A DNA stretch of 64,000 nt from Octopus sinensis (Eukaryota): contig NC_043019.1 in assembly GCF_006345805.1 (NCBI RefSeq), positions 12,399,360-12,463,359 on the forward strand, given 5' to 3'. Of the stretch, positions 10,300-40,844 are shown piece after piece. The number at the start of each line of letters is the position of its first letter. Positions within the stretch are counted from its first letter, which is position 1. Position numbers and translations under genes: made by a program. The notes below the pieces were generated by a model, which saw only the letters and a list, made by a program, of their open reading frames with translations, was not told where the DNA came from and searched no databases.

Positions 10300-10321
10300 G
10301 TAAGTCTTTTTTTTATTGGCA

Positions 10322-10372
<51 letters not shown>

Positions 10373-13466: not shown

Positions 13467-13505
<39 letters not shown>

Positions 13506-17904: not shown

Positions 17905-17954
<50 letters not shown>

Positions 17955-18642
17955 TATTATATTATTAAGGCAGGAAGCTGGAGTCGATAAATTAAGTACC
18001 AGCGAAACACTGGGGTCGATGTAATCAACTGGACCCTTCCCACAAATTTCAGGCCTTTAATCATTAAAATAAAAGAATTAATTATTATATTATTATTATT
18101 ATTATATTATTATTATATTGATAAATTAAATACCAGCGAAACACTGGGGTCGATGTAATTGACTGTACCCTTCCCACAAATTTCAGGCCCTGTGCCCGTA
18201 GTAGAAAATATTATTATCATTATTATATTGTTTTTGTTTTTTTTTAAATCTCTAGATAGTTATTTTGGTGTTGATCTGGCTGAAGAGATCCAGCGAACCA
18301 GTACAGAAGCTCCTGCTGTAGCCATTCGATGTGTGCAGGAAATAGAAAAATGGTGCTCTGATCACAGTAAGTGTCAATCCGTCTGTGCTTATGCATGTTG
18401 GTGTGTGTGAGTGTTATGCCTGGCTGACTCTGGTTTTCTTAGAGAAATTATATGAAATAAAGTGTGAGCGGGTCTGTGTGTGCTCACAGCACACTGAAGC
18501 ACACACACAGATATATATAGATATTTGTATGCATATAAGTATATATATATATATATATTATATATATATATATATATACGTAGATAGATATATGTGTATG
18601 TATATGTAGATAGATATGTGTATGTATATATAGATAGATATA

Positions 18643-18676
<34 letters not shown>

Positions 18677-19669: not shown

Positions 19670-19721
<52 letters not shown>

Positions 19722-19784
19722 AAACAAGTCAAGATAGAAAATGCTAAAATAATTTTATAAAGAACATTTCAGTACTGGTGTATG

Positions 19785-19819
<35 letters not shown>

Positions 19820-22800: not shown

Positions 22801-23293
22801 TGACACCGCTAGAAAAAACTGCCGTTCAAACCGAAAAGATCCAATATTTCTATAACAATGCAGAAAATTGATTGTGCAGGGCTTCTAACCTTAAGCTCAT
22901 CACATATTCCCGATGACGGCATCTTGTTGACACCTTTACACTCCACATGGAGTCAAAGGAAATTAATGAATGAATAATCAATGATGCTAAGCATGGATAA
23001 CGAATGCAGGAAATCATTTGGCAGAACGACACGATTGTGTCTGATTCATTTCACTTCTTTTGATTTATATACTCTTTACTCTTTTACTCTTTTACTTGTT
23101 TCAGTCATTTGACTGCGGCCATGCTGGAGCACCGCCTTTAGTCGAGCAAATCGACCCTGGGACTTATTCTTTGTAAGCCCAGTACTTATTCTGTGGGTCT
23201 CTTTTGCTGAACTGCTAAGTTACGGGGACGTAAACACACCAGCATCGGTTGTCAAGCAATGCTAGGGGGACAAACACAGACACACAAACACAT

Positions 23294-23371
<78 letters not shown>

Positions 23372-26300
23372 TATATATATAATATATATATATATATACA
23401 CACATATATACGACGGGCTTCTTTCAGTTTCCATCTACCAAATCCACTCACAAGGCTTTGGTCGGCCCGGGGCTATAGTAGAAGACACTTGCCCAAGGTG
23501 CCACACAGTGGGACTGAACCCGGAACCATGTGTTTGGTAAGCAAGCTACTTACCACACAGCCACTCCTGCGCCTATGTTTTTTTTTTAATATCTTCTGTT
23601 TTTTTCATTTTTTGTTCTTCACAGCATCTGACCCGCTATTAATAGATATCAGTAGCTTCAACATCCATTCGATAGCTGGTGTGCTCAAGAAATACCTTCG
23701 AGAACTGCCCAACCCTGTAATTCCTGTTGAAAATTATGCCGACTTCATCAAAGCAGCTAGTAAGTGTTCTGTCATTCTTTCATTCTTTTTTTTGCTCAAT
23801 TGCTTTCTTATTGTCGACAGAATTGTCAGCATTTCTCAGACAAAATGCTTTGCAATCTTTCTTCCGACTCATTATGTTCTGAGTTCAAACTTCAACACAG
23901 GTCAGCTTTGCCTTTCATTGTAGAAACTCTGCCAGATCAAGATTGGAGCCTGGTGCAGCCATCTTGTTTGCCAGTCTTCAGACATATCGTCCAACCCATG
24001 CTAGCCTGGAAAGCGGATGTTAAACGACAATGATGATGATTATTATTATGATGATGGTGATTATTATTATTAGGGTGGAGGGCCAGCAGAATTGTTAGCA
24101 TGCCAGGCAAGCTGCTCAATGGCATTTCATCTGTCTTTACATTCTAAGTTCAAATTTCACTGAAGTTGACTTTACCTTTCATCCATTTGGGGTGGATAAA
24201 TTAAGTCCCAGTGAAACACTGGGTTCGATGTAATTGACTATCCCCCTCCCCCATATCTCAGGCCTGTGTCTTTCAGTAGAAAGGTTTATTAAGGTGGTGA
24301 ACAGGCAGAATCGTTAGCATGCCTGGCAAAATGCTTCACAGCATTTCATCTGTCTTTACATTCTGAGTTCAAATTCTGCCGAGGTCGACTTTGCCTTTCG
24401 TCTTTTTGGGGTCGATAAATTAAGTACCAGTGAAACACTGAGGTCAGTGTAATCAACCAGTTCCTTCCCCAGAAATTTCAGGCCTTGCACCTCCAGTAGA
24501 AAGGATTATTATTTGCAGAACCCTTTAGCGCATTGCACAAAAAACTTAGTAGCATTTCTTCCATCTCTTTGTTACCTCAAATGCTGCCGGGGTTAACTTC
24601 ACCTTTCATTCTTTCAGGATCGATAAAATTGTTTACTAGTTGAGCACTGGGGCCATTGTAATCGACTGAGCTCTTCCCTAAAGTTGCTGGCCTTGTGTCG
24701 AAATTGGAAACCATTATTTTTATCATTATTGATATTTTGCCATCTTTTTATGTCTCCTAATTATTTCCCTTTTTCTTTAAGATTCTAACTTTGACCACTG
24801 ACTTTACTTTTCTAACAACAGGGAAATTCTTAATTTATTTTGAATTATCTTCTAATCTAATAACTTATTCTAATTCATTGATTTTCACTTATAATTCAGT
24901 GATATTGCCAGTCCTCAGTATCATTATTGATATTTTGCCATCTTGTCTTTTGATGTCCCTTAAATTTATTTGTCCTTTCTTTAATTTTCAGTGGTCGGTT
25001 CCACAAACGAGAGAGACCTCATGACCTTGGTGACATCCTTACCCTCGGCCCATGCGTCCACGTTGCACTTCTTCATGAAACACTTCTGTCGTCTCTGGCA
25101 GATGCAGTACGAATCTGGCGTGCGAGACGACATAGAGAAGTTGTCGAAAGTGTTCTGTCACATCCTTCTGCGGCCCCCTTGGGAGCGAATTGTGTAAGTT
25201 GGGTCACTCGACCTTTAATTTTGTTTTGTGTGTGTGTGTGTGTGTGTGTTTAAGTGTGAGGCCCATGTGGTTAAGAAGTCCCCTTTTGGACCCTGTATGA
25301 ACAATTGGCTGTTATCTTCTACTATACTGAGTAAGAAGTCTGGAAAACACACAAAACGATGATGATATATATCATCATCATCATCGTTTAACGTCCGCTT
25401 TCCATGCTAGCATGGGTTGGATGATATGACTGATGTCTGGCGAACCAGATGGCTACACCAGACTCCATTCTGATCTGGCAGAATTTCTACAGCTGGATGC
25501 CCTTCCTAACACTCAACCACTCTGAGAGCGTAGTAGGTGCTCTTACATGCCACCGGCATGAGGGCCAGTCAGGCAGTACCGGCAACGGCCATGCTCAGAT
25601 GGTGTTTTTTACGTGCCACCTGCACAGGAGCCAGTCCAGCGGCACTGACAACGACCTTGCTTGAATGTTTTACACATGCTACCAGCACAAGTGCCAGTAA
25701 GGCAATGCAGGTAACGATCACGCTCAAATGGTGTTTTTTACGTACCACTGGCACCGATCAGGCTCAGGTGGTATTCTTAGCACTCCACTAGCACGGATGC
25801 CAGTTATTGAATTTGATTTCCATTTCACTTGCCTCAACAGGTCTTCGCAAGCAGAGTTTAGTGTTCAACGAAGGAAAGTATTCATTATGTGTGACAGAAG
25901 CAATATTAGTTTAGAATGGCAATCAGTGTATCATACTGAATTGGTCTGGGAATCAAACTCACTATCTTGTGATTGCAAGCTTGATGCTCTAACCACCTAG
26001 CCATGCACCTTGTTAATAGCATGTATGTTTGTTTGTTTTTTTGTTGTTGTTGTTGTTTTTTCTTTACTATTTTAATTATTTGATTTTCTTTCTTCCGTTT
26101 CGTACAGAGAAATTGTGGAGAATACAAAGTTACACATTGAGCTGGTTGAGAACTTGCTTTCTTATGGGGATTGGGGTGTGGAAAAACCAAATGTTCATAA
26201 TCCACCCCCTATACCCAAGCGACCCAGTAAGTTGTTTGTCACTATTATTATCATTATTATTATCATCATTATTATTATTATTATTATTAATATTATTACC

Positions 26301-26486
26301 ATTCCACCTGTTTTTGCTGCTGTTGTTGTTTTGGTCAGCTCTGATTGAGCAGACTAATGATTAATGATATTCCAGCCTTGATCATCCTCTCTTTTATTCA
26401 GACAATCTAGGGCTAAATTATCTTGTGTGTCATATTTCTTCCTTTTGAAAGATACACACACACAGGTATGTGAGTGTATGTGTGTT

Positions 26487-26521
<35 letters not shown>

Positions 26522-29500
26522 CTGCATACTTGCATACACACACACACACACACGCATATATATATATATGCATACATACATATATATAGGCATACATACA
26601 TATATATATATATGTAAATATATATATATATATATGCTCATACACACACAAGTACATAGGTATATATACATACACAGGAATGTATGAATGTATATATGTA
26701 TACACACACACACACACGTATAAATATGCAGCTATCCATACGCACATACATAAATATACATACATTTATATACATGCATATAAATATATAGGTGTATACA
26801 AGCTAAGTGAAATCGTGGTTGTCCTTGCATGCAGGCATGTCCCCTGCATCCCTCTTCATCTCAGCGATCCTAATTTTGCAGGGTTCTGGGTACTGGCGTC
26901 ACATAAAAAGCACCCATACCAGTTTCGTGTAAAAGCACCCATACCTATGTTGTGTAAGAGCACCCGGTACACTCTATGAAGGGGTTTGCATTAGGAAGGG
27001 CATCCAGCTGTAGAAACCATGCTAAGACTGGCATGGAACCTGGGCAGCCTCTTCTGCTGGTTGGCTCCTGTCAAAGCATCCAACCTATGCCAGCTAGGAG
27101 AGAAAAAAAAATAAATGCGCCCCTTTTAAAGCCTAGTCAGACTCATGGGCCCGGTTTCTAAGGCGTATATGTTCCCCAGCTGGACGGGACGCCAGCCCAT
27201 CGCAGCGTTACTCATTTTTGCCAGCTGAGTGGACTGGAGCAATGTAGAATGAAGTGTTTTGCTCAAGAACACAACACGTCGCCCGGTCCAGGAATCGAAA
27301 TCACAATCTTACGATCATGGTGCTGACACCCTAACCACTAAGCCACGCGCCTCAACTGCCAGCTAGGAGAACTGATGTTAAATTATGGTGATGCACACAC
27401 ACACACACTTCTTTTTCTTCATTGTTGCAACATCCACTTTGCCATGCCACTTTATCACCCACTATACCCCTGTATGTCCATACCCGCACAGGGTTTACTT
27501 CTAGACTAGTTACCACCGCGACCACCACCACCCCCTGTACACGCTGCCCTAATCCTCAATCCTATCTTCCATTGTAGATGATGCACCAACTACTCCAGCC
27601 AAATATGAACTGAAGGACGCTGAGTGGTACTGGGGCGAGTTATCAAGGTTTGTGTCTCCCTTCCTCCTCTCCCTTTTTTCTCTCTTTCTCTCACGCACAC
27701 ACACACGCACCTCCCCTCTCTTTGCTTTTTGTTCAGATCTAATCTATATTATTAGTGTTATTATGGCTGCAAGGTGGCAGAAACGTTAGCACGCCAGGCG
27801 AAATGCGTAGCCGTATTTTGTCTGCCACTACGTTCTGTGTTCAAATTCCGCCGAGGTCGACTTTTAAGTACCAGTTACACACTGGGGTCGATGTAATCGA
27901 CTTAATACCTATGTCTGTCCTTGTTTGTCCCCTCTGTGTTTAGCCCCTTGTGGGTACTAAATAAATAGGTATTTTGTCCTTCTTTATGTTCTGGGTTCAA
28001 ATTCCACCGAGCTCGATTTTTGCCCTTCAATCTTTTTTGGGGTCGTGAATTAGTTACCAGTCGTGTACTGAGGTCAATGTAACTGTCCTTCTCCCCCAAA
28101 ATTTCAGGCCTTGTGCCTATTGTAGATAATTTTATTATTATGTCAGCAAACTGGTAGAAATGTTAAGCCCACCAGACGAAATGCTTCGTCTGTCTGTATG
28201 TTCTGGGTTTAAATTCTACTGAGGTCAACTTCGCCTTTCATTCTTTTGGGGGTTGATAAAATAAGTACCAGTTGAGCACTGGGGTCATTGTAATTGGTTT
28301 AACCCTTCACCTGAAACTGTTACCCTTGTGTCAAAATTTGAGATAATTATTATTATTATTTCGCAGAGGTCAACTTTACTTTTATTCCTTTCGGGGTCGA
28401 TAAAATAAGCATCAGTTGAGCACTGAGATAAATGCAATCAATTTAACCCCCCCCCCCCCGAACTTGCTGGCCTTGTGCAAAATTTGGAAACCATTATTAT
28501 TAGGATTATTACTATTAAGGCTGCGAGCTGGCAGAACCATTAGCATGAAAGGCAAAATGCTTAAATTTCATTTCGTCCTTTAACATTCTGAACTCAAATT
28601 CTGCTGGGGTCAAATTTAATTTTCATGCTTTCAGAATTGATAAATTAAGTACCAGTGAAGCACTGGGGGCAATGTTATCGACTAGTCCCCTTCCCCCAAA
28701 ATTTCAGGCCTTGTGCCTTTAGTAGAAAGGCTGATTATTATTATTATTAATGTCATTATTATTATTATTATTTTTTTTTTTTTCTTATACCTAATTTTAT
28801 GTGTTGTTAATATTCCAGAGAAGAGGTAAATGATAAGCTGAAGGACACGTCAGATGGAACCTTTTTGGTTCGGGATGCCTCTACGCATGGTGACTACACT
28901 CTAACACTCAGGTAAGCAAGCCCCTCTCATTCTTCTACCCCTGTCTCTTTCCCCCCTCAATCCCTCCCTATCTCGCTTTTGCAGTCTGGTTGCAGAGAAA
29001 AAGACAACGGCAGTAAATGTGTAACCCTTTACCCTTCAGACCATTCCTTCAAGCGTAAACCTTATTTATTCATCTTGTTTTAAATTAATCATATATTATC
29101 TTACAACAGTGATGTGATTGTTATTTTTAGAATGACATTGTATGTTGAGTGTGAGAGGTTGGATCAGGCTAGTTTGATTGTAAACAAGTAAATTATTTGG
29201 GCCGGATGTGGCCAGTTTAAATGCTAAAGTGTTGATCATTTATTAAATTTGTCCCAAGTTTCTGAATTTTTTTATAATTGATTGAATTGATGTCTGGCCA
29301 TGGCAAATCTACCTCATTGAATTCCATCTAACTCATGCAGGCAGGGAAAAAATGGACGTAAAATTTTCTCCTGTTGTTTTATTCTGTTATTGAATCCTAT
29401 AGGGGTTCTATAAACAGTGACGCTGGTTGGATTTGAATCCTGAAACTAGAGGAATGTAATTAAACATGGATACTGCAGTGTTTTAAATTACAAGAAAACC

Positions 29501-32500
29501 AAAAGAAAAAAAGTGGAAGAAAGAAAGAAAATAGGTGTGGGTGTGGCTGTGTAGTAAGAAGCTTGCTTCCCAACCTTATGGTTCTGGGTTCAGTCCCACT
29601 ACATGACACCTTGGCCAAGTGTCTTCTACTATAACCTTGGGCTGACCAAAGCCTTGTGAGTGGATTTGGAAGTAGCCCATCTTTTATACCAAAATTGTGT
29701 TCATATATTTATGCCTCAGTGTCACTTTTATGGCATGCACTGCTCTCACTCAATTATAATAATAGTGAAATGGAACCAGTGCATGTGCTTATATTGGCAT
29801 ACTGACCTGCCCAAAGAGCAACAAAATCTGTTTCAAAACACAAATTCACATCAATAATCTTGCAAACCAAATAATTTATAAAAATACCAAGAAAACTATT
29901 TTCGTGAAATTTGAATGATAAAATCCTAATTGTTTAAAAACAAAATCTATAAAACTGAAATAATTTTGGAATTTTCAGGAAAGGCGGCAGCAATAAATTA
30001 ATAAAAATTTACCACAAAAACAACAAATACGGATTTGTTGAACCGTTAACTTTTGATTCGGTGGTCGAACTCATTGAACATTACCGCTACAATTCTCTGG
30101 CCATCTATAACCGAGCTCTTGATACTCAGCTGGAACACCCCGTCTGTAAACCAGGTCCGGTACGTATTAAAAAAATGCAAACACTTCTTTCTCTCTCCAT
30201 CTCGTAAAGTGTGAGAGTTTTGGTGAATCTGTCACACTTCCTCTTCACTTTTTATTCCACTCTTTTTTTTAAATTTTTGTTTAGTCTTCTGTTTGTTTTT
30301 GTTGTGTTTGAGGGTTTTATCCAACGTACTATATAAATTACAGAGTCCACCAAAACATGTATACACACTTCAGGAAAGGAAAAATTTGTGTCAGTAAATA
30401 TAAATACCTCTTTCAATGTATCCTTCAGCTTATCATTTACCTCTTCTATGGAATATTAACAATACATAAAATTAGGTATAATAATAATAATAATAATAAA
30501 TGCCCTGATGCAGTACCAGGCAGTGGCTCTCATGGCTTCTGATCTTAACTGATTGGAAGTGTTATCATGTACATTGTTTTGTCTTGGTATAAAAGATGGG
30601 CTACAGCAAATATTCTGCTCCACAGATTTGCTTGTCAGTTGTTTGACCTTAACCAGTTGAGTATGTCCCTTAGTGGCTGACGATATGTGCATCTCTGATC
30701 ACGAGCAGAAATAGTTGGGGAGCATCATAGCCGTGTGTTGAAAGAAATTCTTAGAGGTTTGGATAATTCACCTTCGGAAACATGGGTGGTTCGTTCAACA
30801 TCCTTAAACAATCCTAATTCAGGGACCTTTTGAGCAGGATGGGCTACTCGACCAGAAGAAAATTGTAACTGGGCCCCACCTGCAAGGTCATGCGCTGTTT
30901 ATCTTGATATGAGATCACCACGTCGTGCACATATGGTTGTGATGCATGTGCCTAGTGTACCCTTATCAGACGAGTAGTCATGATGGGTATACTGGGCTTT
31001 GTATATTTTACCCCAGTGTCACTTTGATGGCATGCACTGCTCTCTCACTCAATAATAATAATAATAATAATAATGATGATCCTTTCTACTAAAGGCACAA
31101 GGCCTGAAATTTTAGGGGAGGGGACTAGTCGATAACATCGACCCCAGTACTTCACTGGTATTTAACTTGATGATAATAATGATGATGATGATAATCCTTT
31201 CTACTATGGGTACAAGGCCTGAAGTTTGTGGGGTGGAGGCTGGTCGATTACATCAACTCGGGTGCAAATAAGTACCAGGCTTAAAATGTATGAACATAAA
31301 AGTACTGCAGGGGTTGATTTATCTGACTATTCAAGGCAGTGCTCCAGCATGGCCTCAGTTCAGTGATTGAAACAAGTGAAAGAAAGAACCAATAAAGTGA
31401 CATAAACCTCCTTGATAAAAAGAAAGTTCTAACGTTTGGCTTTTTTTCTTTTTTCTTCTCTTCTCTTCCCTCCCCTGCTCCTTTGTCCATTCCCGTTGGT
31501 GCCATCGCTGCTATTTACCAAATTCAGTATATAACAATTGGTGCCGACGCCCAGAAAGATGAGTTGGAGAAATTACTAAAGATCAACAAGGAATACCAAG
31601 AGAAGGCCAACTCCTTCGATCGTCTCTATGAAAACCATTCCAAAACGTCACAGGTAAGAACTTTGATCGAAACTCAACATAACCTTCCCAATCTCCGGCT
31701 TCCAAATCCTGTCTTTTGGCTGGGTGAAAATTATCAAACCTTAACCTCATCCATTTTTTTTTTTTTTTTCTGAAGAAAGTGAAATACCTGTTAAGATTGA
31801 GCTTGGAAAACTACATTAATGTATCAAATTAAAAAAATTTTTTAATAAATTTTGAATTTTAGAGAATTGACAGCCAAACCGAAAAAATCAGAAAATCACC
31901 AATGTCTCAAAGGAGTGAGTGTCGTGGAGTTTAGTTATATCCAACAAACACTAAAGTTTTTCCCAAAATCCAGGGTTTTTATAACTGCTCAACTTGACTT
32001 TAAAGAATTGAAATCACATACAAATATTCTTTACGAAACTTTTAGAATCTCTATATGAGCAGTTATATTAACCAATGGAAAAACGACAATAATATTTTTT
32101 CGGCAATACGACATTACGTCATATTGCCAGCTACCACATATTGGCGCCTTATTTTAAAATGGCTACTTGCAACAAATCCAATAAAGGATTTCTTGCTTGG
32201 AAAACAGGTAAGAGTTAGCATTTGGTAGGGTTTCCGGTTTGGCTGTAAAAAAAAAAATGGCAAAAATTTTTTTTAAATCCCCAAAGAATGCCATAACATA
32301 TTCATCCTACCCATACTTGAATGAACAGTGTTGATGATGAAATTCCTTGTGTGTCTTTTGCAGGAGTTACAGCTCAAAAGTCAGGCACTTGATGCATTCC
32401 GAGAAACATTATCAGTGTTTGAAGAACAGATAAAACTGCATGAGCGGCATCACAAAGATGCCCAAGCACATGAGGCACAAAAGTAAGCCCTTCTCTTCTC

Positions 32501-35500
32501 ACCCTTCTCTTCTCACCCTTCTCTTCTCACCCTTCTCTTCTCACCCTTCTCTTCTCACCCTTCTCTTCTCACCCTTCTCTTCTCACCCTTCTCTTCACCC
32601 TTCTCTTCTCACCCTTCTCTTCTCACCCTTCTCTTCTCACCCTTCTCTTCTCACCCTTCTCTTCTCACCCTTCTCTTCTCACCCTTCTCTTCTCACCCTT
32701 CTCTTCTCACCCTTCTCTTCTCACCCTTCTCTTCTCACCCTTCTCTTCTCACCCTTCTCTTCTCACCCTTCTCTTCTCACCTTCTCTTCTCACCCTTCTC
32801 TTCTCACCCTTCTCTTCTCACCCTTCTTCTTCTCACCCTTCTCTTCTCACCCTTCTCTTCTCACCCTTCTCTTCTCACCCTCTCTCTCACCCCTTCTCTT
32901 CTTCTCTTCTCACCTTCTCTTCTCACCCTTTCTCTCACCCCTTCTCTCTCTTCTCACCCTTCTTCTCACCCTTCTTCTCACCCTTCTTCTCACCCTTCTC
33001 TCTTCTCACCCTTCTCTTCTCACCCTTCCTTCTCACCCTTCTCTTCTCACCCTTCTCTCTCTTCTCACCCTTCTCTTCTTCTCACCCTTCTCTTCTCACC
33101 CTTCTCTTCTCCCCTTCTCTTCTCACCCTTCTCTTCTCCCCTTCTCTTCTCACCCTTCTCTTCTCACCCTTCTCTTCTCACCCTTCTCTTCTCACCTTCT
33201 CTTCTCACCCTTCTCTTCTCACCCCTTCTCTTCTCACCCTTCTCTTCTCACCTCTCTTCTCACCCTTCTCTTCTCACCCTTCTCTTCTCACCCTTCTCTT
33301 CTCACCCTTCTCTTCTCACCCTTCTCTTCTCACCCTTCTCTTCTCACCCTTCTCTTCTCACCCTTCTCTTCTCACCCTTCTCTTCTCACCCTTCTCTTCT
33401 CCCCCCTTCTCTTCTCACCCTTCTCTTCTCACCCTTCTCTTCTCACCCTTCTCTTCTCACCCTCTCTTCTCACCCTTCTCTTCTCACCCTTCTCTTCTCA
33501 CCCTTCTCTTCTCACCCTTCTCTTCTCACCCTTCTCTTCTCACCCTTCTCTTCTCACCCTTCTCTTCTCACCCTTCTCTTCTCACCCTTCTCTTCTCACC
33601 CTTCTCTTCTCACCCTTCTCTTCTCACCTTCTCTTCTCACCCTTCTCTTCTCACCCTTCTCTTCTCACCCTTCTCTCTCACCCCTTCTCTTCTCACCCTT
33701 CTCTTCTCACCCTTCTCTTCTCACCCTTCTCTTCTCACCCTTCTCTTCTCACCCTTCTCTTCTCACCCTTCTCTTCTCACCCCTTCTCTCTCACCCCTCT
33801 CTTCTCACCCTTCTCTTCTCACCCTTCTCTTCTCACCCTTCTCTTCTCACCCTTCTCTTCTCACCCTTCTCTTCTCACCCTTCTTCTCACCCTTCTCTTC
33901 ACCCTTCTCTTCTCACCCTTCTCTTCTCACCCTTCTCTTCTCACCCTTCTCTTCTCACCCTTCTCTTCTCACCCTTCTCTTCTCACCCTCTCTTCTCACC
34001 CTTCTCTTCTCACCCTTCTCTTCTCACCCTTCTCTTCTCACCCTTCTCTTCTCACCCTTCTCTTCTCACCCTTCTCTTCTCACCCTTCTCTTCTCACCCT
34101 TCTCTTCTCACCCTTCTCTTCTCACCCTTCTCTTCTCACCCATTCTCTACCCATTTTCTCTCCTTATTTCTTTATTACCCACAAGGAGCTAAACTTAGAG
34201 GGGACAAACAAGGACAGACAAACGGATTAAGTCGATTACATCGACCCCAGTGCATAACTGGTACTTATTTAATCGAACCCCCGAAAGGATGAAAGGCAAA
34301 GTCGACCTCGGCAGAATTTGAACTCAGAACGTAACGGTAGACGAAATACTTCTAAGTATTTCGCCCGGCGTGCTAACGATTCTGCCAGCTCGCCGCCTTT
34401 TCTCTCCTTGTCGCAGAGTTAACTGGGCTTCGGGTCGTTACATGAAGGGTTGGTTCTTGGTTTAAAGTTGGCTCGTGTTGAGCTGTTTGTATATCTTATA
34501 TCCCAGTCATGTGTACTTTGCTGTCACTCGGTACCACGGACTGTGCAGCTCAGCTTTTCTACTCTTTGTTAAATGCCAGTGTAGCTGTGTGAGTAGGCGC
34601 AGGTGTGGCTTTGTGGTAGGATGCTTGCTTCCCAACCACATGGTTCTGGGTTCAGTCCCACTGCATAGCATCTTGGGCAAGTATCTTTTACTATGTCCTT
34701 GAGCCAATCAAAGCCTTTTGAGTGGATTTGGTAGATGGAAACTGAAAGAGGTCTATCATATATATATATACGCATATGCACACACATGCATGTGTGCATG
34801 TCTGTGTTTGTTCCCCACCATTGCTTGACAACTGGTGTTGCTTTGTTTACATCCCTGCAACTTAACAGTTCGGCAAAGGAGACTGATAGAATGTGTCACA
34901 CTTCAGAAATAAGTAATGGGATCAATTTGTTCAACCAAAAGCCATTCAGCGTGGTGCCCCAGCATGGCTGCAGTAGTAGACATTAAAAATGATGATGATC
35001 CTCCATCCCAGCATTTTTTTTCTAATCTCACACCTTTACTTTTTCTTCTTTTAGGTTGCATGAGAACTTTGAGTTACTGAAACGCCGACTCAGCAGTATA
35101 ACGGAAAACCGGTTGCAGCTGACCATCGACATCCAGCAACAGACGCAGCGCAACAGGTCCTACATCAGTGAGATGAACAGTTTAAAACCAGAACTAAAAC
35201 GGCTGTGTAGGACTAGGGAGATGAGTAAAAAGTAAGTGCTGCTGCTGTTGGTGTTGTTATCGCTAGCCACTACACATTCTTTGTTTTCTCTCCCTGGTTT
35301 AATTTTGTGTTCCTTTCTGTGGAAGAGCAGAGGCTCGAAACGTTAAACACTTTTTTACTTCCTGAGCGTTATACTAATACATCTCTTTGTTGTCTACACC
35401 ACCTGTCTTTGTCTTTTGTTTTTTTGTGAATTCTCCCCCTATATATATATATACACACACACGCACGCACACACGCATATACATACAGTAATCCCTTGAC

Positions 35501-35713
35501 CATCGTGGGTATGTTCCACCCCGCCCCTACTCCCCTATGATACGTGAAAATCCACAAAGTAGAAACAGTACTGTAGTGTATATTTTTTTATTTTTATAAT
35601 TTGCATATATTAATTTTAATATAAATACAAAACGACACCACAGACGAATCAACGTGAGCTTAAATGATAAACCACGATATGGCAAGTGATTACTGTGTAT
35701 ATGTATGTATGTA

Positions 35714-35770
<57 letters not shown>

Positions 35771-38700
35771 ACAATTCACAAGTAAATAATTATAATTCAC
35801 ATAAATGGTTGTGTAAAGCACATTATCTCTTCTTTTTTACTCTCCACATTCTTTCATTCTCTCTCTCACTCATATCTTCTCTCATCTTTTCCACTGTCCC
35901 ACTCTTTCTATTTCTTTTTTCTCTTTGTAGCCCTCTCTCTCTCCTTCTCTCACTCTCTTCTTCCACTCTCTTTCTGGCTTTCTCTTTTCTTTTGCTCTTT
36001 CCCTATCTTACTTTACCACTTCCTCTTCCTCTCACCGTCTCACTCATTTCTACCTTTATCATTACAGATTATTACTTCAGAATGGTATGAGCCAAGACTT
36101 CTTAGATAACCAATTAGAAGGACGTAAAGAAAAGTAAGTCAACCACATTTTATTTTCTTTCTTCCCATCTTTTATATAACGGACTCTTTTGCTTTGTCTT
36201 ATGAACACACACACAAATTTACATATCTCAAATATTGATATTAACCTCTTAACATACAAGTTTTTTTTTTCAATTTCCTTGCAAAAAATATAATTTTTTA
36301 TTATTCATTTTGAATCTGTATATAAGGAAGAACAAATACACAAATTATTTTCATTCAGTTTATGATTTACTAGCATTATCGCCCGGCGTTGCTCGGGTTT
36401 GTTTTGACCCTTTAGAATTAGAATTTTTGAAAAGTAAATATTTTGCATTATGTAGCTTGTTATTCTCTTTAAGTGAACATTTTTCTGGTTGAAATACACC
36501 GAAAAATGGCGACACAGCAGTAAAAAAATCGTAAAAAATAGGGATTTTCATAGAAAAAAAGCACCTTTTTGATGTAAATAATTTTTGGTGTTAACATGGT
36601 CCGATTTGAATTTTATCTTCTACGGAAGGAAGAGCAAGCCTTCTTCTATCATACACTCAATTTTGGTCAACTTGCGCCGCAGGGTCTTGGAGGAGATAGT
36701 GTTAGTTGATGGCTACCAAACCTGACACACACAGACAACTTCAGCTTTATATATAGGGAGATTACGAAGTTACTGATAGAAATGATAGTTACTGATAGTT
36801 AATGATGGAAAATGGGAATAACATTATGAACGAAGTATTTCAGGATAGAAATAAGTGATGGATATCCTCAGAATTCTGTGGACGTATATTTTCAATGAAA
36901 TATATATTTACTAGACATCTCTGAACGAAAATATACAGGTTAATATGTCAAGAGGTTAATAAATCCAGCACCAATACAGTGGACGTTATCAATAAACATT
37001 TATATATTACTCTTTTTAATCTTTTACTTGTTTCAGTCATTTGACTGCGGCCATGCTGGAGCACCGCCTTTAATCGAGCAACTCGACCCCGGGACTTATT
37101 CTTTTTGTAAGCCCAGTACTTATTTTATCGGTCTCTTTTGCCGAACCACTAAGTAATGGGGACATAAACACACCAGCATCGGTTGTCAAGCAATGCTAGG
37201 GGGACAAATACAGACACACAAACACACACACGCATATATATATATATATATATACATATATACGACAGGCTTCTTTCAGTTTCCGTCTACCAAATCCACT
37301 CACAAGGCTTTGGTCGGCCCGAGGCTATAGGTGAAGACACTTGCCCAAGGTGCCACGCAGTGGGACTGAACCCGGAACCATGTGGTTGGTAAACAAGCTA
37401 CTTACCACACAGCCACTCCTGCGCCTGGTTTATGTTTAATAAGCGTCCCTGCCACAACAGGGACAGAAACAGGTGTCTTGCTGTGGAGGAGTTAGATGGC
37501 TACTCTTGTCAGAGAGAGAAAGAGAGGGAGATGGTAACAATGTGTTTGGGCATACCCTCAAGGTAAATGGGGTGATAGAAGATTGGACAGGGTATGTGAG
37601 CAGGGAATTCTTGAGAATGCAGAAGGAAAGGGAAATGCAGTGACTGGTAAAACACAGGTATATCGAGATCAAAAAGATAGCAGTGATAAAGTTGGTAAGT
37701 GGAAGTGCAAGAGAGATGACAGAGCTGTGTTGGGCTGCAAGAATTTGGGGAGAAAGGCAAGCGTTATGCATAAACAAGGGATGTAGTTTGGGTTCATAGG
37801 GACAAGGTGTGTGAACAATCGATCGATTGAGTGATTGCTAGACAGGTAAAACACAGGTATATCGGGATCAACAGGATAGCAGTGATAAAGTTGGTAAGTG
37901 GAAGTGCAAGAGAGATGACAGGGCTGTGTTGGGCTGCAAGAATTTGGGGAGTAAGGCAAGCGTTATGCATAAACAAGGGATGTAGTTTGGGTTCATAGGG
38001 ACAAGGTGTGTGAATAATCGATCGATTGAGTGATTGCTAGACAGGTAAAACACAGGTATATCGGGATCAAAAAGATAGCAGTGATAAGTGGAAGTGCAAG
38101 AGAGATGACAGAGCTGTGTTGGGCTGCAAGAATTGGGGAGAAAGGCAAACGTTATGCATAAACAAGGGATGTAGTTTGGGTTCATAGGGACAAGGTGTGT
38201 GAACAATCGATCGATTGTTGAGTGATTGCTAGACAGGTAGATAGTCATTATTAGAGAGAGCCACGCAGTGGGACTGAACCCGGGACCATGTGGTTGGTAG
38301 GCTAGCTACTAACCACACAGTCACTCCTGTGCCTATAACTATGATTATAATATTTTTCTTACATATTTCGCGTCACCTGATCATTACCGCATCGCCTTAC
38401 TGGCACTTGTGCTGGTGGCACGTGAAACATTCAAGCGAGGTCGATGCCAGTGCTGCTGGACTGGCTCCTGTGCATGTGGTACATAAAAAGCACCATTTGG
38501 ACGTGGCCACTGCCAGTACCACCAAACTGGCCCTCGTGCCGGTGGCACGTAAAAGCAACCACTACACTCTTGGAGTGGTTGGCGTTAGGAAGGGCATCCA
38601 GCTGTAGAAACTCTGCCAAATCAGATTGGAGTCTGGTTCGCCAGACCTCAGTCAAATCGTCCAACCTATGCTAGCATGGAAAGCGGATGTTAAACGATGA

Positions 38701-40844
38701 TGATGATGATGTAGCATTTTTCCTTTTCTTTCTTTCCAGTGATAACAGTTCAGTTTCTGACGACCTTACTCATCGACAGGAGAGCTTATGGCTTATACCA
38801 TGCCAACGAGATGAGGCTGAAAAACTGCTTGAGGGCAAACCCGACGGGACTTTCTTGATTCGACCTAAAAATAACGGACAATTTTATGCATTGTCTATTG
38901 TGTGAGTATGAATATTGTCCCCCTGGGAGCAATTCTTTTATTCTTGTGCCTGTAAAACTCTTTACTCTTTTACTTGTTTCAGTCATTTGACTGCGGCCAT
39001 GCTGGAGCACCACCTTTAGTTGAGGAAATTGACACCAGGACTTATTCTCTGTAAGCCTAGTACTTATTCTATCGGTCTATTTTGCCGAACCGCTAAGTAA
39101 CGGAGAACGTAAACACACCAGCATCGGTTGTCAAGTGATGTTGGGGGGACAAACACATACACATATACATATACATGTATACGACGGGCTTCTTTCAGTT
39201 TCTGTCTACCAAATCCACTCACAAGGCTTTGGTTGGCCCGAGGCTCTAGTAGAAGACACTTGCCCAAGGTGCCACGCAGTGGGACTGAACCCGGAACCAT
39301 GTGGTTGGTAAACAAGCTACTTACCACACAGCCACTCCTGCGCCTAATAGAGAAGATTATTATTTTTATTATTATCAAGGCTGCAAGCTGATGGAATCGT
39401 TAGCACTGTGGATGAAATGCTTAATAGTATTTCACCTGTCACTATGTTCTGAGTTCAAATTCCACCAAGGTCAACTTCGCCTTTAATCCTTTTGGAGTCG
39501 GTAAATTCAGTACCAGTTGAATTCTGGGGTTGATGGAATCGACAAGTCTTCTCCCTCAAAATTTCTGGCCTTGTGCCTATAATAGAAAGGATTATCAGGT
39601 GGCAAGCTGGCGGAATCACTTGCACACCAGGTGGAATGCTTAGCAGTATTTTATCTGTCTTTTACGTTCTGAGTTCAAATTCTGCTGAGGTTGACTTTGT
39701 CTTTCATCCTTTCAGGGTTAGTAATAATAATGATGAAATTTTTCGTATACAGTGCTCCTGTGCACCACATCTTGTCAAAAGTGCATATAAACATATGCAG
39801 TAATGTACAAATGTCTGGAAAGTGAACAGTGTATGAGTCAGATATATGCTTGCATGTGTATGGAGGGGAGAAAATCAGGTGTAGCGTTGGCGAATCTCAG
39901 GAAGCATGGAAGTTTTGACGGATGCAGGGCTCCGACAACTAACAACTGATGCCGGCAGTTTGTTCCATGCTTCAGCAACTCTTAGCATGAAAAAAATGTT
40001 TCCGAAAGTCATGGGAGCTGTGCTGTTTTCTGACTTTGTAAATATGTCCACGGGTGTTAGACAGGTGGAGTTTGAAAAGGTGCTCGGAATTGTTTGTAAG
40101 ATGGTTAATGATAAAATAAATAGCAGTTGAGAACTGCGGTCGATGTAATTGGCTCATCCTCTTTTGCAAAATTGCTTCCCTTGTGCCAAAATTTTAAACC
40201 ATTTTTATTAACCCTTTAGCATTTAAACCGGCCATATCCGGCCAAAAGTATTCTGCCTGTTTTATGTTCAAACTGGTGAGATCTGGTCTCTCACACCAAC
40301 CCTACAATATCGTTTTAAAAATTAACAATTACCTCATCAAAATCTCATAGCTACAAGATAATGTATGATTAGTTCAAAACAATGTGGATGAAGAAGCATT
40401 AATTGTGGCAGAATAATGCGAACACTAAAGGGTTAATATTACTTTCTGGTTTATTCTTTATTGTTATTATATATTTCTTTTTTTTTTCTTTTTTATTTTT
40501 CCAACCAATCCAACTGCGGTACCTACCTGTGAAATTTGCTGCTCTGGTGACGAAACAGACATGAAAAAGTGATAGGCCATTGTAAAATCCTGCGGAAAAA
40601 CGGCAACTATGGCTTTGCCGAGCCATACATTATTCATCCGTCGCTACTGGAGTTGGTGTTACACTACCAGAAGACGTCGCTGTCCGAACACAACGAGCAC
40701 CTGGACGTGACGTTGAAGTTCCCGCTGAAGGCGGGGATAATGGCTGAAGACGTCAGTGGGAGTGGCGGGGATGCCCTCTACGCCCGCATGACCTCCATGA
40801 ATCTCTCGTCCAATCAGTGTCCACCATGGGATCACGATGGCTGA
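10196..40844 (+). CDS. PIK3R1: Class IA PI3K regulatory subunit (p85-like, co-orthologue of PIK3R1/2/3); 20 exons, 5'-incomplete; C1-SAM-C1-RhoGAP-SH2-iSH2-SH2
   Basis: 20 GT-AG exons join in one frame (2522 nt: 2 nt of a split codon, 839 aa, stop). Motifs [63 protein letters not shown] and [27 protein letters not shown] match the p85 SH2 and iSH2 regions. Confidence 0.95.
10420..10554 (+). CDS. PIK3R1: p85-like exon: SAM domain part 1 ([45 protein letters not shown])
   Basis: TTTCAG acceptor, GTTTGT donor, phase 0-0; W..V..W..L..Y...F....I.G..L SAM pattern. Confidence 0.9.
11330..12000 (+). mobile_element. Degenerate LINE reverse-transcriptase fragment
   Basis: [15 protein letters not shown] at about 11648-11695 resembles the GVPQGSxLSPxLF RT motif; heavily decayed. 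Confidence 0.6.
12270..12575. repeat. 60-bp tandem repeat (5 copies) inside an RTE-type tail
   Basis: GGATGGTGCTTTTTACGTGCCACC...GGCAAACGGCCACGGAC. Confidence 0.85.
12648..12728 (+). CDS. PIK3R1: p85-like exon: SAM domain part 2 ([27 protein letters not shown])
   Basis: TTACAG acceptor, GTGAGT donor, phase 0-0. Confidence 0.9.
14197..14257 (+). CDS. PIK3R1: p85-like 61-nt linker exon ([20 protein letters not shown])
   Basis: ATTCAG acceptor after a pyrimidine tract, GTAAGT donor; supplies exactly the phase 0 to 1 bridge required between its neighbours. Confidence 0.75.
14440..15225. mobile_element. hAT-type MITE containing a nested Tigger/pogo-like MITE (14545-15055)
   Basis: Outer TIRs CAGTGATTCTCAA / TTGAAAACCACTG with an 8-bp TSD (GTTTAATC / GTTTAGTC); inner TIRs CCGTAAATCCTCGAGTATA / TATACTCGAGGATTTACTG with TA TSD. 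Confidence 0.8.
15752..15868 (+). CDS. PIK3R1: p85-like exon: second C1 domain, N-half ([39 protein letters not shown])
   Basis: TTTCAG acceptor, GTAGGT donor, phase 1-1; HxF...CxxC...GL..QG..C pattern. Confidence 0.92.
16965..17063 (+). CDS. PIK3R1: p85-like exon: second C1 domain, C-half ([33 protein letters not shown])
   Basis: ATGTAG acceptor, GTAAGT donor, phase 1-1. Confidence 0.9.
17358..17905 (+). mobile_element. About 550-bp dispersed element flanked by (TTA)n; copies at 30497-31056 (-) and 60741-61230 (+)
   Basis: Near-identical sequence (GAGCAGTGCATGCCATCAAAGTGACACTGGGG...GAAGCCATGAGAGCCACTGCCTGGTAC) in three places. Confidence 0.85.
18256..18366 (+). CDS. PIK3R1: p85-like exon: RhoGAP start ([36 protein letters not shown])
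   Basis: CTCTAG acceptor, GTAAGT donor; FG..L...P.....C...IE RhoGAP motif. Confidence 0.92.
20129..20206 (+). CDS. PIK3R1: p85-like exon: RhoGAP arginine-finger region ([25 protein letters not shown])
   Basis: TTGCAG acceptor, GTAAGT donor, phase 1-1; YR motif. Confidence 0.9.
21040..21310 (+). mobile_element. RTE-like LINE ORF C-terminal fragment with 3' tail to about 21560
   Basis: [29 protein letters not shown] followed by the shared (TGA)n-tailed 3' sequence. Confidence 0.7.
23075..23575 (-). mobile_element. tRNA-derived SINE family A, full length (others at 34590-34985 +, 37015-37426 -, 38960-39348 -, 48345-48750 -, 54538-54950 +, 57285-57630 -, plus many fragments)
   Basis: Head GGAGTGGCTGTGTGG...GGTTCAGTCCC (A/B box), central (TA)/(TG) microsatellite and tail AAACAAGTAAAAGAG. 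Confidence 0.9.
23625..23759 (+). CDS. PIK3R1: p85-like exon: RhoGAP ([44 protein letters not shown])
   Basis: TCACAG acceptor, GTAAGT donor; [15 protein letters not shown] motif. Confidence 0.95.
24992..25193 (+). CDS. PIK3R1: p85-like exon: RhoGAP C-terminal part (VGSTNERDL...[19 protein letters not shown])
   Basis: TTTCAG acceptor, GTAAGT donor, phase 1 to 2. Confidence 0.9.
26108..26226 (+). CDS. PIK3R1: p85-like exon: RhoGAP end plus proline-rich motif ([17 protein letters not shown]...NPPPIPKRP)
   Basis: GTACAG acceptor, GTAAGT donor, phase 2 to 1; PxxPxR SH3-ligand motif. Confidence 0.9.
27578..27647 (+). CDS. PIK3R1: p85-like exon: nSH2 start ([23 protein letters not shown])
   Basis: TTGTAG acceptor, GTTTGT donor; AEWYWG motif. 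Confidence 0.93.
28819..28911 (+). CDS. PIK3R1: p85-like exon: nSH2 ([31 protein letters not shown])
   Basis: TTCCAG acceptor, GTAAGC donor; FLVRD motif. Confidence 0.97.
29979..30159 (+). CDS. PIK3R1: p85-like exon: nSH2 end ([60 protein letters not shown])
   Basis: TTTCAG acceptor; the GTACGT donor was chosen for phase 0 with the next exon. Confidence 0.93.
31528..31653 (+). CDS. PIK3R1: p85-like exon: iSH2 helix 1 ([42 protein letters not shown])
   Basis: ATTCAG acceptor, GTAAGA donor; 126 nt, phase 0-0. Confidence 0.9.
32364..32482 (+). CDS. PIK3R1: p85-like exon: iSH2 ([40 protein letters not shown])
   Basis: TTGCAG acceptor, GTAAGC donor, phase 0 to 2. Confidence 0.93.
32487..34141. 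repeat. 1.65-kb pure-pyrimidine-rich 14-mer satellite (CCCTTCTCTTCTCA)n
   Basis: Direct reading; it begins within the donor site of exon 32364-32482. Confidence 0.97.
35055..35231 (+). CDS. PIK3R1: p85-like exon: iSH2 helix 2 ([14 protein letters not shown]...[20 protein letters not shown])
   Basis: TTTTAG acceptor, GTAAGT donor, phase 2-2. Confidence 0.93.
35314..35347 (+). ncRNA. Degenerate minimal hammerhead motif (Penelope-type)
   Basis: CUGUGGA-A-GAGC-AGAG-GCUC-GAAA-CGU-U-AAA; core A6 is mutated. A truncated copy follows the gap at 55848. Confidence 0.35.
36068..36133 (+). CDS. PIK3R1: p85-like exon: iSH2 helix 3 ([21 protein letters not shown])
   Basis: TTACAG acceptor after a long pyrimidine tract, GTAAGT donor, phase 2-2; positionally equivalent to the human WLTQKG exon. 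Confidence 0.8.
36369..36756 (+). mobile_element. Non-autonomous Helitron-like element (related copies on minus at 8800-9047 and 45250-45585)
   Basis: Shared 5' ACTAGCA..TCGCCCGGCGTTGCTCGG and a 3' CTTTATATATAG end; the class assignment is an inference. Confidence 0.5.
37647..38237. repeat. About 199-bp tandem repeat, 3 copies
   Basis: GGTAAAACACAGGTATATCG...GATTGCTAGAC at about 37647, 37845 and 38044. Confidence 0.9.
38740..38901 (+). CDS. PIK3R1: p85-like exon: cSH2 N-half ([54 protein letters not shown])
   Basis: TTCCAG acceptor, GTGAGT donor. Confidence 0.95.
39770..40105 (-). mobile_element. CR1-like LINE 3' fragment
   Basis: [30 protein letters not shown] motif. Confidence 0.65.
40208..40436. 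mobile_element. piggyBac-like MITE
   Basis: TTAA-CCCTTTAG ... CTAAAGGG-TTAA; related partial ends occur at 1-600, 15320 and 29025-29235. Confidence 0.7.
40559..40844 (+). CDS. PIK3R1: p85-like terminal exon: cSH2 C-half plus about 30-aa tail (...[24 protein letters not shown])
   Basis: AAACAG acceptor in phase 2; YGFAEPY, LVLHY and LDVTL.FP motifs; TGA stop at 40842-40844. Confidence 0.93.

What the first reader, a model, noticed from the sequence alone, without database searches (positions are those of the whole stretch)
40740..40844. p85 carries its own YxxM ligand in a C-terminal tail
Seen: after cSH2 ends (LKFPLK) the frame runs about 30 more residues, including [15 protein letters not shown]: acidic residues, a flexible Gly/Ser linker and Y-A-R-M. 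Known: pYxxM is the ligand of p85 SH2 domains and relieves p110 inhibition; human p85 ends a few residues after cSH2, whereas p55 isoforms have an N-terminal YxxM. Inference: a built-in phospho-switch for intramolecular SH2 occupancy (self-activation, or competition with receptors) or for p85 chaining. I do not know of a description of this.
Basis: partly seen in the sequence, partly recalled or inferred. Interest (0 to 1): 0.75.

Follow-up and report, generated by a model that had tools for sequence, protein, structure and literature searches.

The report
Conserved YxxM tail on octopus p85
The octopus PI3-kinase regulatory subunit (p85) ends in a disordered tail carrying the sequence its own SH2 domains normally recognise on receptors, and this motif is kept across molluscs, a brachiopod and some annelids, which suggests an untested self-docking or self-amplifying switch.

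Summary
Window 40559-40844 (+) is the last exon of an intact p85 (PIK3R) gene. My 20-exon model is identical to Octopus sinensis XP_029649998.1. After the cSH2 domain (…VTLKFPLK) come 37 more residues, [37 protein letters not shown], then a stop. YARM (40779-40790) is the only YxxM in the 1008-aa protein.

One such motif in one tail is about a 3% chance event. Conservation is what makes it significant. Octopus and Argonauta keep YARM and Sepia has YALM. 21 of 22 named molluscs, Lingula, Owenia and Capitella all carry a C-terminal Y-[L/A]-x-M. The pattern is an invariant Tyr, Met at +3 in 30 of 32, upstream acidic residues, and a variable 7-17 residue spacer.

Arthropods have a tail Tyr without Met. 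Deuterostomes have no comparable tail. AlphaFold2 predicts the tail to be disordered. I found no published description.

The mechanism is inferred, not shown. The tail is most likely a phosphotyrosine ligand for PI3K SH2 domains. Binding is more plausible in trans, or to the nSH2, than to its own cSH2, because some orthologues have only a 7-8 residue spacer. Phosphorylation and binding are untested. I rate it a new variant of a known kind, of moderate interest.

The parts
10196..40844 (+). Part of the p85 (PIK3R) gene lying in the window: 20 coding exons encoding C1 (partial)-SAM-C1-BH/RhoGAP-nSH2-iSH2-cSH2-tail. The 5' exons (SH3 and the first half of the C1 domain) lie upstream of the window.
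   Evidence: tblastn with human and mollusc p85. All introns are AG/GT, and the 839-aa model is an exact substring of O. sinensis P0121.
27578..30159 (+). nSH2 domain, three exons (27578-27647, 28819-28911, 29979-30159), with the FLVR motif '[10 protein letters not shown]'.
   Evidence: The tblastn matches to human p85alpha nSH2 (two of the three nSH2 exons) are 86% and 66% identical.
31528..36133 (+). iSH2 coiled coil, four exons (31528-31653, 32364-32482, 35055-35231, 36068-36133).
   Evidence: Pfam PF16454, E = 1.3e-35.
38740..38901 (+). First cSH2 exon, containing the FLVR motif 'DGTFLIRPK'.
40559..40730 (+). Second half of the cSH2 in the last exon ([11 protein letters not shown]...VTLKFPLK).
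   Evidence: It aligns to human p85alpha up to residue 720. AF2 pLDDT is above 90.
40731..40778 (+). Spacer [16 protein letters not shown]: 16 residues between the cSH2 and the Tyr, acidic and Gly/Ser-rich. Its length and sequence vary among orthologues.
   Evidence: AF2 confidence is low.
40779..40790 (+). Y-A-R-M (Tyr988 of XP_029649998.1), the only YxxM in the protein and the conserved core of the tail.
   Evidence: only YxxM in the protein; conservation.
40791..40811 (+). TSMNLSS, a variable linker between the two conserved islands of the cephalopod tail.
   Evidence: Octopus, Argonauta and Sepia comparison.
40812..40841 (+). [10 protein letters not shown], a cephalopod-specific conserved C-terminal motif (Sepia has NQCPSWDHDG, Argonauta [10 protein letters not shown]). 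Function unknown.
40842..40844 (+). TGA stop codon.
   Evidence: Sepia and Argonauta orthologues end at the same position.

Best explanation
The 37-residue tail is genuine coding sequence: a disordered C-terminal extension of the octopus class IA PI3K regulatory subunit. Its YARM is the cephalopod form of a short linear motif, consensus [D/E]-x-[V/L/I]-Y-[L/A]-x-M-[N/Q], that sits at the C-terminus of p85 in molluscs, a brachiopod and some annelids. This much is shown. What follows is inferred. When p85 is brought to an active tyrosine kinase, the tail Tyr is phosphorylated. The resulting pYxxM is the canonical ligand of p85-type SH2 domains, so it is bound by an SH2 domain of PI3K itself. The spacer is only 7-8 residues in several lineages. 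The conserved binding mode is therefore probably in trans (the nSH2 or cSH2 of a second p85/p110 complex, or a reciprocal STAT-like p85 pair), or possibly the nSH2 of the same complex, rather than the cSH2 it hangs from. SH2 occupancy relieves p110 inhibition, so the expected result is feed-forward recruitment and activation of further PI3K at an activated receptor. With free p85 the result would be phospho-dependent dimerisation.
For: The gene and tail are real: canonical splicing, an exact match to the RefSeq protein, and the same stop position in Sepia and Argonauta. The motif is conserved across more than one phylum: 21 of 22 named molluscs, Lingula YTYM, Owenia YARM, Capitella YQVM. Y988 and M991 are invariant columns in a 22-sequence full-length alignment whose tail is otherwise variable. 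Position-specific pattern: Tyr in 32 of 32, +3 Met in 30 of 32 with Leu only twice, +1 Leu in 22 of 32, an acidic residue at -4..-1 in 24 of 32. Met-specific +3 is the hallmark of p85 SH2 ligands, and upstream acidic residues are typical of tyrosine-kinase substrates (established knowledge: Songyang 1993, 1995). The number of tails with YxxM far exceeds the shuffle and composition expectations. The tail is disordered, with pLDDT below 50, both alone with the cSH2 and in the full-length model. Both SH2 domains keep FLVR and are close to human nSH2 and cSH2. There are precedents for p85 pTyr binding p85 SH2: pY607-nSH2 dimers in trans (PMC9127371), and pY688 relieving inhibition (Cuevas 2001, as cited in PMC10839044).
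Against: There is no evidence here that the Tyr is phosphorylated or that any SH2 binds it. AF2 cannot model pTyr and docks nothing. The +1 residue (Leu or Ala) is not the optimal Met/Val/Ile/Glu for the nSH2. The motif is missing in the nemertean Tubulanus (YMAP), in Physella (YLRL), in an annelid-like subclade (tails ending GYFQDF or GHYQDLS), and in every arthropod and deuterostome sampled, so it is dispensable for core PI3K function. That the octopus SH2 domains prefer pYxxM is inferred from homology, not measured.
Confidence: 0.5

Rival explanations
1. The tail phosphotyrosine is a docking site for a different SH2 or PTB protein, for example the SHP2 orthologue Corkscrew or a Src-family kinase, rather than for PI3K's own SH2 domains. 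It would couple p85 to another pathway or to its own dephosphorylation.
For: Arthropod p85 tails keep a Tyr near the C-terminus in a [G/D]-Y-[V/I]-x-x context without Met, so the Tyr may be older than the Met. Drosophila p60 binds Corkscrew (SHP2) directly, without a YxxM adaptor (PMC4738311). Helicoverpa P60 is tyrosine-phosphorylated, and a Corkscrew-like phosphatase removes the phosphate (PMC8075199).
Against: Met at +3 in 30 of 32 over very long divergence is what p85-type SH2 domains select. SHP2-type and Src-type SH2 domains would tolerate or prefer V/I/L/P at that position (plus established specificity data). Positional homology between the arthropod and lophotrochozoan Tyr cannot be established in so short a tail.
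Confidence: 0.2
2. The motif works without phosphorylation. It could be a hydrophobic Y-x-x-hydrophobic contact that packs on p110 or on the cSH2 to tune inhibition, or an AP-2-type YxxPhi sorting signal.
For: YLRM formally fits YxxPhi. The motif lies at a nearly fixed distance from the C-terminus, 3 residues after Met in most gastropods and bivalves. AF2 gives a weak helical tendency over LYARMTSM in the full-length model.
Against: A generic hydrophobic position should interchange L, I, V, F and M, yet Met is kept in 30 of 32. The tail has pLDDT below 50 and no confident packing in either model. p85 is cytosolic, not a membrane cargo. The upstream acidic residues fit a kinase substrate.
Confidence: 0.15
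3. Cis clamp. The phosphorylated tail folds back onto the cSH2 of the same chain. It would either pre-release the cSH2 brake on p110 or compete with receptors as negative feedback.
For: In octopus the spacer is 16-17 residues, with a Gly/Ser stretch that could allow fold-back. Crk, Src, SHP2 and PLCgamma use cis pTyr-SH2 closure (established knowledge).
Against: The conserved motif also occurs with spacers of 7-8 residues (Bradybaena, Owenia, Lingula, Capitella, Patella). That is too short to reach the pY pocket from the SH2 C-terminus, which lies on the opposite face (established SH2 structure). A function shared by all these orthologues therefore cannot be cis binding to the cSH2. This does not exclude it as an octopus-specific addition.
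Confidence: 0.1
4. Chance or neutral sequence with no function.
For: One YxxM in a 37-residue tail has a probability of about 0.03, and one per 1008 residues is about what composition predicts.
Against: The number of tails with YxxM is more than ten times the shuffle expectation. Tyr and Met are invariant inside otherwise unalignable tails across Mollusca, Annelida and Brachiopoda, and the motif is found in only 1 of 98 non-lophotrochozoan tails.
Confidence: 0.02

Closest known systems
N-terminal YxxM of the vertebrate short regulatory isoforms p55gamma (p55PIK) and p55alpha (Pons et al. 1995; from my own knowledge, paper not held)
   Same: A class IA PI3K regulatory subunit that carries, in a short non-domain extension, the consensus ligand of its own SH2 domains.
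   Different: The vertebrate motif is at the N-terminus, just before the proline-rich region and nSH2, in isoform-specific exons. Here the motif is at the extreme C-terminus, after the cSH2, and is shared by all annotated isoforms (X1-X3). It occurs in a different animal superphylum. Its function is poorly defined even in vertebrates.
p85alpha pTyr607-nSH2 dimers in trans (Clayton et al. 2022, PMC9127371), and pTyr688 relief of p110 inhibition (Cuevas et al. 2001)
   Same: A phosphotyrosine on p85 itself is read by a p85 SH2 domain, producing dimers or relieving inhibition.
   Different: Those tyrosines lie inside the iSH2 and cSH2 folds and are not YxxM motifs. The octopus site is a canonical YxxM in a disordered tail.
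Tail-phosphotyrosine switches of other SH2 proteins: STAT reciprocal dimers, Src pY527, SHP2 Y542/Y580, Crk Y221, PLCgamma1 pY783 (established knowledge)
   Same: A Tyr C-terminal to an SH2 domain in the same polypeptide, matching an SH2 specificity, acts as a phospho-switch. The short spacer resembles the STAT case, where the tail is read in trans.
   Different: None of these is a PI3K subunit. For the p85 tail, neither phosphorylation nor binding has been shown.
Arthropod p85/p60 C-terminal extensions (Drosophila p60, Weinkove et al. 1997; from my own knowledge, paper not held)
   Same: An invertebrate regulatory subunit with an extra, non-domain C-terminal tail after the cSH2, often with a Tyr near the end.
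   Different: The arthropod tails read [G/D]-Y-[V/I]-x-x with no Met at +3. Decapod crustaceans have almost no tail.

Membership tests
Class IA PI3K regulatory subunit (p85/PIK3R) | Two SH2 domains flanking a coiled-coil inter-SH2 (p110-binding) domain | tested here: met
   Pfam PF00017 twice and PF16454 (E = 1.3e-35) in P0121, which contains the window's model exactly. PDB sequence hits to p85alpha/beta cSH2, E = 5e-39.
Class IA PI3K regulatory subunit (p85/PIK3R) | BH/RhoGAP-homology domain in the long isoform | tested here: met
   PF00620, E = 4e-24. Exons at 18256-25193.
Class IA PI3K regulatory subunit (p85/PIK3R) | N-terminal SH3 domain | tested here: inconclusive
   The exon lies outside the window. 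Pfam gives no SH3 hit for P0121 at E <= 0.01. AF2 does fold residues 1-75 as a confident beta-rich domain, and some orthologues carry PF14604 or PF07653.
Class IA PI3K regulatory subunit (p85/PIK3R) | pTyr-binding FLVR arginine in both SH2 domains | tested here: met
   Read directly from the sequence: [10 protein letters not shown] (nSH2) and DGTFLIRPK (cSH2).
pYxxM ligand motif of PI3K SH2 domains (short linear motif) | Tyr with Met at +3 | tested here: met
   YARM at 40779-40790. +3 is Met in 30 of 32 orthologous tails.
pYxxM ligand motif of PI3K SH2 domains (short linear motif) | Lies in an accessible, disordered segment | tested here: met
   AF2 pLDDT below 50 over the motif, both in the cSH2+tail model and in the full-length model.
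pYxxM ligand motif of PI3K SH2 domains (short linear motif) | Motif residues conserved more than their flanks | tested here: met
   Tyr and Met are invariant or nearly so, while spacer length ranges 7-17 and spacer sequence is unalignable.
pYxxM ligand motif of PI3K SH2 domains (short linear motif) | The Tyr is phosphorylated in cells | not testable with these tools
   No phosphoproteomic data are available. No paper on this site was found.
pYxxM ligand motif of PI3K SH2 domains (short linear motif) | The phosphopeptide binds p85 nSH2 or cSH2 | not testable with these tools
   This needs ITC or fluorescence polarisation, or a structure predictor that handles phosphotyrosine.
Cis-acting SH2 tail switch (Src, Crk or SHP2 type) | Linker long enough for the tail pTyr to reach an SH2 pocket in the same chain | tested here: inconclusive
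   The spacer is 16-17 residues in octopus but only 7-8 in several orthologues with the same motif.
YxxPhi tyrosine-based sorting signal (AP-2 mu2) | Any bulky hydrophobic residue (L/I/M/F/V) tolerated at +3, in a membrane-cargo context | tested here: not met
   +3 is Met in 30 of 32 and never I, V or F. p85 has no transmembrane segment (domain list).

The most novel reading that the evidence does not exclude
Lophotrochozoan PI3K carries its own receptor-like docking site. Once the tail is phosphorylated at an active receptor, p85/p110 complexes recruit and de-repress one another through reciprocal or chained pYxxM-SH2 contacts, a STAT-like or polymerising mode. This would amplify PIP3 production without IRS- or Gab-type scaffolds. 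The tail Tyr would be ancestral to protostomes, retuned to a Corkscrew/SHP2-type site in arthropods, and lost or collapsed onto the SH2 (PVYAQQ, PVYAQM) in vertebrates.
Probability: 0.2. Interest if true: 0.75.

Novelty: new variant of a known kind. Interest (0 to 1): 0.55.

Why it matters
Class IA PI3K is one of the most studied signalling enzymes, and its regulation is usually described as SH2 domains reading pYxxM on receptors and adaptors. A regulatory subunit that carries a conserved pYxxM-type site itself, in a whole superphylum, implies a layer of self-recruitment, dimerisation or feedback absent from the mammalian textbook model. It gives a concrete hypothesis testable with peptides. 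It may also explain how insulin and growth-factor signalling is wired in molluscs and annelids, including aquaculture species and cephalopod models. Finally, it offers a natural experiment for the debated roles of p85 dimers and of the cSH2 brake.

Tried and rejected
1. I searched the window for the SH3 exon and the first C1 half-exon with five mollusc N-termini. None was found, so they lie upstream of the window.

2. The O. bimaculoides protein P0001 could not serve as a gene-model guide. It is mis-predicted, with intron read-through, a PIF1-like insert and missing BH exons.

3. I considered that the tail might be an annotation artefact, or that a further C-terminal domain exon exists, because Pfam lists SAM domains in orthologues. 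This was rejected. The SAM domain is N-terminal (residues 207-268), and the stop position and terminal WDHDG are shared with Sepia and Argonauta.

4. The primary papers on Drosophila p60 (Weinkove 1997) and p55PIK (Pons 1995) are not held. Statements about them rest on my own knowledge.

5. A third homologue search seeded with the Owenia cSH2+tail, meant to find more annelids, returned only arthropods.

6. The 50%-identity representative search has no taxon names. I placed its hits on a FastTree with named anchors. This exposed that my first '32 of 34' count had left out unnamed lophotrochozoan-clade sequences that lack the motif. The tree-defined count is 32 of 41.

7. AF2 of cSH2+tail and of the full-length protein shows no docking of the tail. 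This is uninformative about the phosphorylated state.

8. dN/dS on the tail was not attempted. Octopus species are identical there, and Sepia is too diverged.


Full report
**What is in the window.**
The window is animal genomic DNA. tblastn with human p85alpha found a colinear series of + strand exons covering the BH, nSH2, iSH2 and cSH2 domains. I read the splice junctions by hand. The result is 20 exons between 10196 and 40844, every intron AG/GT, giving an open 839-codon model. That model is an exact substring (residues 170-1008) of Octopus sinensis XP_029649998.1, 'PI3K regulatory subunit alpha isoform X1' (P0121). The same 90% cluster holds the O. vulgaris protein. The SH3 exon and the first half of a C1 domain are upstream of the window. 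The Pfam architecture of the full protein is C1-SAM-C1-RhoGAP(BH)-SH2-iSH2-SH2.

**The observation.**
- The last exon (40559-40844) begins in phase with the preceding cSH2 exon. It encodes [11 protein letters not shown]...VTLKFPLK, then [37 protein letters not shown], then TGA.
- The extension is 37 residues. YARM is at 40779-40790 and corresponds to Tyr988.
- Sequence homology to every solved p85 structure ends at ...FPLKA, which is human residue 720 of 724. The tail therefore has no vertebrate counterpart, and human p85alpha really does stop a few residues after the cSH2.
- YARM is the only YxxM in the 1008-residue protein.

**Is it more than chance?**
On its own it is not. With Tyr at 3.6% and Met at 2.3%, a 37-residue tail has about a 3% chance of containing YxxM. 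The weight comes from orthologues.
- Cephalopods: O. sinensis, O. vulgaris, O. bimaculoides and Argonauta hians keep GDALYARM, although Argonauta differs at five other tail positions. The cuttlefish Acanthosepion (Sepia) pharaonis has ...DDSHYALMSSTNQCPSWDHDG. All annotated isoforms share the tail.
- Other named lophotrochozoans: 21 of 22 named molluscs end with Y-x-x-M (YLRM, YLHM, YLSM, YLQM, YLKM, YTRM, YMSM). The exception is Physella, with YLRL. The brachiopod Lingula has YTYM, and the annelids Owenia and Capitella have YARM and YQVM. The nemertean Tubulanus has YMAP, which is not a match.
- Statistics: in the first set of 34 tails, 32 have the motif. Shuffling the same tails gives 2.4 (maximum 9 in 5000 shuffles), and background composition gives 0.47. 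Among 98 other tails, only 1 has it.
- Position by position: Tyr 32 of 32; +3 Met 30 of 32 (Leu twice); +1 Leu 22 of 32; +4 Asn or Gln 22 of 32; an acidic residue within -4..-1 in 24 of 32.
- Flanks: the spacer from the cSH2 varies from 7 to 17 residues and cannot be aligned. In a 22-sequence full-length alignment, Y988 and M991 are invariant columns.

**Limits of the distribution.**
A profile search of 1.84 billion cluster representatives was placed on a FastTree with named anchors. It recovers a well-supported lophotrochozoan clade.
- Within that clade, molluscs, Lingula, Owenia and Capitella (with two unnamed relatives) have the motif.
- Tubulanus, two unnamed sequences, one long-branch bivalve-like sequence and a five-member annelid-like subclade (tails ending GYFQDF, GHYQDLS or NYQ) do not.
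- Counting every sequence that falls in the clade gives 32 of 41. The earlier 32 of 34 was slightly flattering, because unnamed sequences lacking the motif had not been grouped with the clade.
- Outside the clade only three tails hold YxxM. An insect-like one ends GYVAM. An arthropod-like one ends CYEDMV. A vertebrate p55gamma-like one reads PVYAQMPPSLCR, with the Tyr flush against the SH2.
- Arthropods usually keep a Tyr near the C-terminus in a [G/D]-Y-[V/I]-x-x context. Decapod crustaceans, echinoderms, hemichordates and vertebrates have short tails without it.

**Structure.**
AlphaFold2 on cSH2+tail with 29 aligned orthologues gives a confident SH2 (pLDDT above 90) and a tail below 50 across residues 120-136, which include YARM. 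The full-length model gives pLDDT 31-34 for residues 975-1008 and no sign of docking. The unphosphorylated tail is therefore predicted to be disordered and exposed. AF2 says nothing about the phosphorylated state.

**How it most likely works.**
- Shown: a real, conserved, disordered C-terminal motif whose invariant positions are exactly the two that define a PI3K SH2 ligand, preceded by acidic residues.
- Established knowledge: p85 SH2 domains select Met at +3. Tyrosine kinases of the insulin-receptor type favour acidic residues upstream and hydrophobic +1/+3 positions. SH2 occupancy relieves p110 inhibition. The N- and C-termini of an SH2 domain lie on the face opposite the pTyr pocket.
- Inferred: the tail Tyr is phosphorylated when p85 is at an active kinase, and is then read by a PI3K SH2 domain. 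Several orthologues have only 7-8 residues between the cSH2 and the Tyr. The mode shared by all of them cannot be fold-back onto the same cSH2. Binding in trans (a second p85/p110, or a reciprocal pair as in STATs) or to the nSH2 fits better. The longer Gly/Ser spacer in octopus would additionally permit cis closure.
- Precedents within p85: pTyr607 binds the nSH2 of another p85 in trans and forms dimers (PMC9127371). pTyr688 is reported to relieve inhibition (Cuevas 2001, cited in PMC10839044).
- I put about 0.5 on this mechanism.

**Rivals.**
1. A docking site for another SH2 protein. Drosophila p60 binds Corkscrew/SHP2 directly (PMC4738311). Helicoverpa P60 is tyrosine-phosphorylated and is dephosphorylated by a Corkscrew-like phosphatase (PMC8075199). 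The arthropod Y-[V/I] tails would suit such SH2 domains. The Met-specific +3 in lophotrochozoans argues against this for the octopus motif.
2. A phosphorylation-independent hydrophobic contact or a YxxPhi signal. This is disfavoured by the lack of L/I/V/F exchange at +3 and by the predicted disorder.
3. A cis clamp on the protein's own cSH2. This is possible only where the spacer is long.
4. Chance. This is excluded by the conservation.

**Comparison with what is known.**
The gene is an unambiguous p85 family member. The tail motif meets the sequence, accessibility and conservation criteria of a pYxxM SH2 ligand. Phosphorylation and binding could not be tested.
- The nearest known relative of the idea is the N-terminal YxxM of vertebrate p55gamma and p55alpha. 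That one sits at the other end of the protein, in isoform-specific exons, in another phylum.
- The nearest mechanistic relatives are p85 pTyr607/pTyr688, and the tail switches of STAT, Src, SHP2, Crk and PLCgamma.
- Eight full-text searches found no description of a C-terminal YxxM in any invertebrate p85. The only comparative note found concerns the extra C1 and SAM domains of shrimp p85 (PMC12817958).
- The library lacks most subscription journals, so this is absence of evidence, not proof of novelty.

**Verdict.**
It is a new variant of a known kind. Interest is 0.55. It is a clean hypothesis, testable with peptides, about a very well-studied enzyme in an under-studied superphylum, but it rests on sequence conservation alone.

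Noticed in passing
window 40812-40841: A second conserved island in the cephalopod tail: [10 protein letters not shown] at the extreme C-terminus (Sepia NQCPSWDHDG, Argonauta [10 protein letters not shown]). It is absent from all other molluscs, whose tails end 1-5 residues after the Met. Function unknown.
   Followed up: partly
window 28773-28848 and 30418-30493: A 76-nt inverted repeat, 91% complementary. One arm spans the acceptor and first bases of nSH2 exon 13. The other lies in the intron after exon 14, so the pair brackets two nSH2 exons. Such pairs can promote back-splicing (circRNA) or exon skipping.
   Followed up: no
window 10196-17063 (exons for C1-SAM-C1): Octopus p85, like most invertebrate p85s in the search, has two C1 domains and a SAM domain between the SH3 and BH domains. 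Vertebrate p85 lacks them. I found this noted in the literature only for shrimp (PMC12817958).
   Followed up: partly
related proteins (arthropod p85/p60 tails): Arthropod tails lack YxxM but often keep a Tyr near the C-terminus in a [G/D]-Y-[V/I]-x-x context, for example GYVFSQPR, GYINLGN, DYIPPQTNS, QYVNFSN. Drosophila p60 is reported to bind Corkscrew/SHP2 directly, so this Tyr may be a Corkscrew SH2 site.
   Followed up: no
related proteins P0164, P0162, P0105: Vertebrate C-termini read PV-YAQQRR (p85alpha), and one p55gamma-like representative reads PV-YAQMPPSLCR. This resembles the YARM of Owenia and Octopus with the spacer deleted. It could be a vestige of an ancestral tail motif or a coincidence.
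   Followed up: no
P0001 (O. bimaculoides LOC106879157) versus window 18256-36133: The public O. bimaculoides protein model for this gene is mis-predicted. It contains translated intron sequence and a PIF1-helicase-like segment, and it lacks the BH exons and part of the iSH2. The window shows the intact gene structure.
   Followed up: partly
window ~5894-6049, ~23400-23560, ~37200-37440: An interspersed repeat recurs in introns and upstream sequence. Its translation (…[36 protein letters not shown]…) appears at all three places. It is probably a SINE-like element.
   Followed up: no
related proteins P0027, P0040, P0060, P0088, P0161: An unnamed subclade, sister to Capitella within the lophotrochozoan clade, has replaced YxxM with tails ending in G-[Y/H]-[F/Y]-Q-D or NYQ. 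The tail Tyr is retained with a different +3 residue, which suggests the partner was retuned rather than the site simply lost.
   Followed up: no
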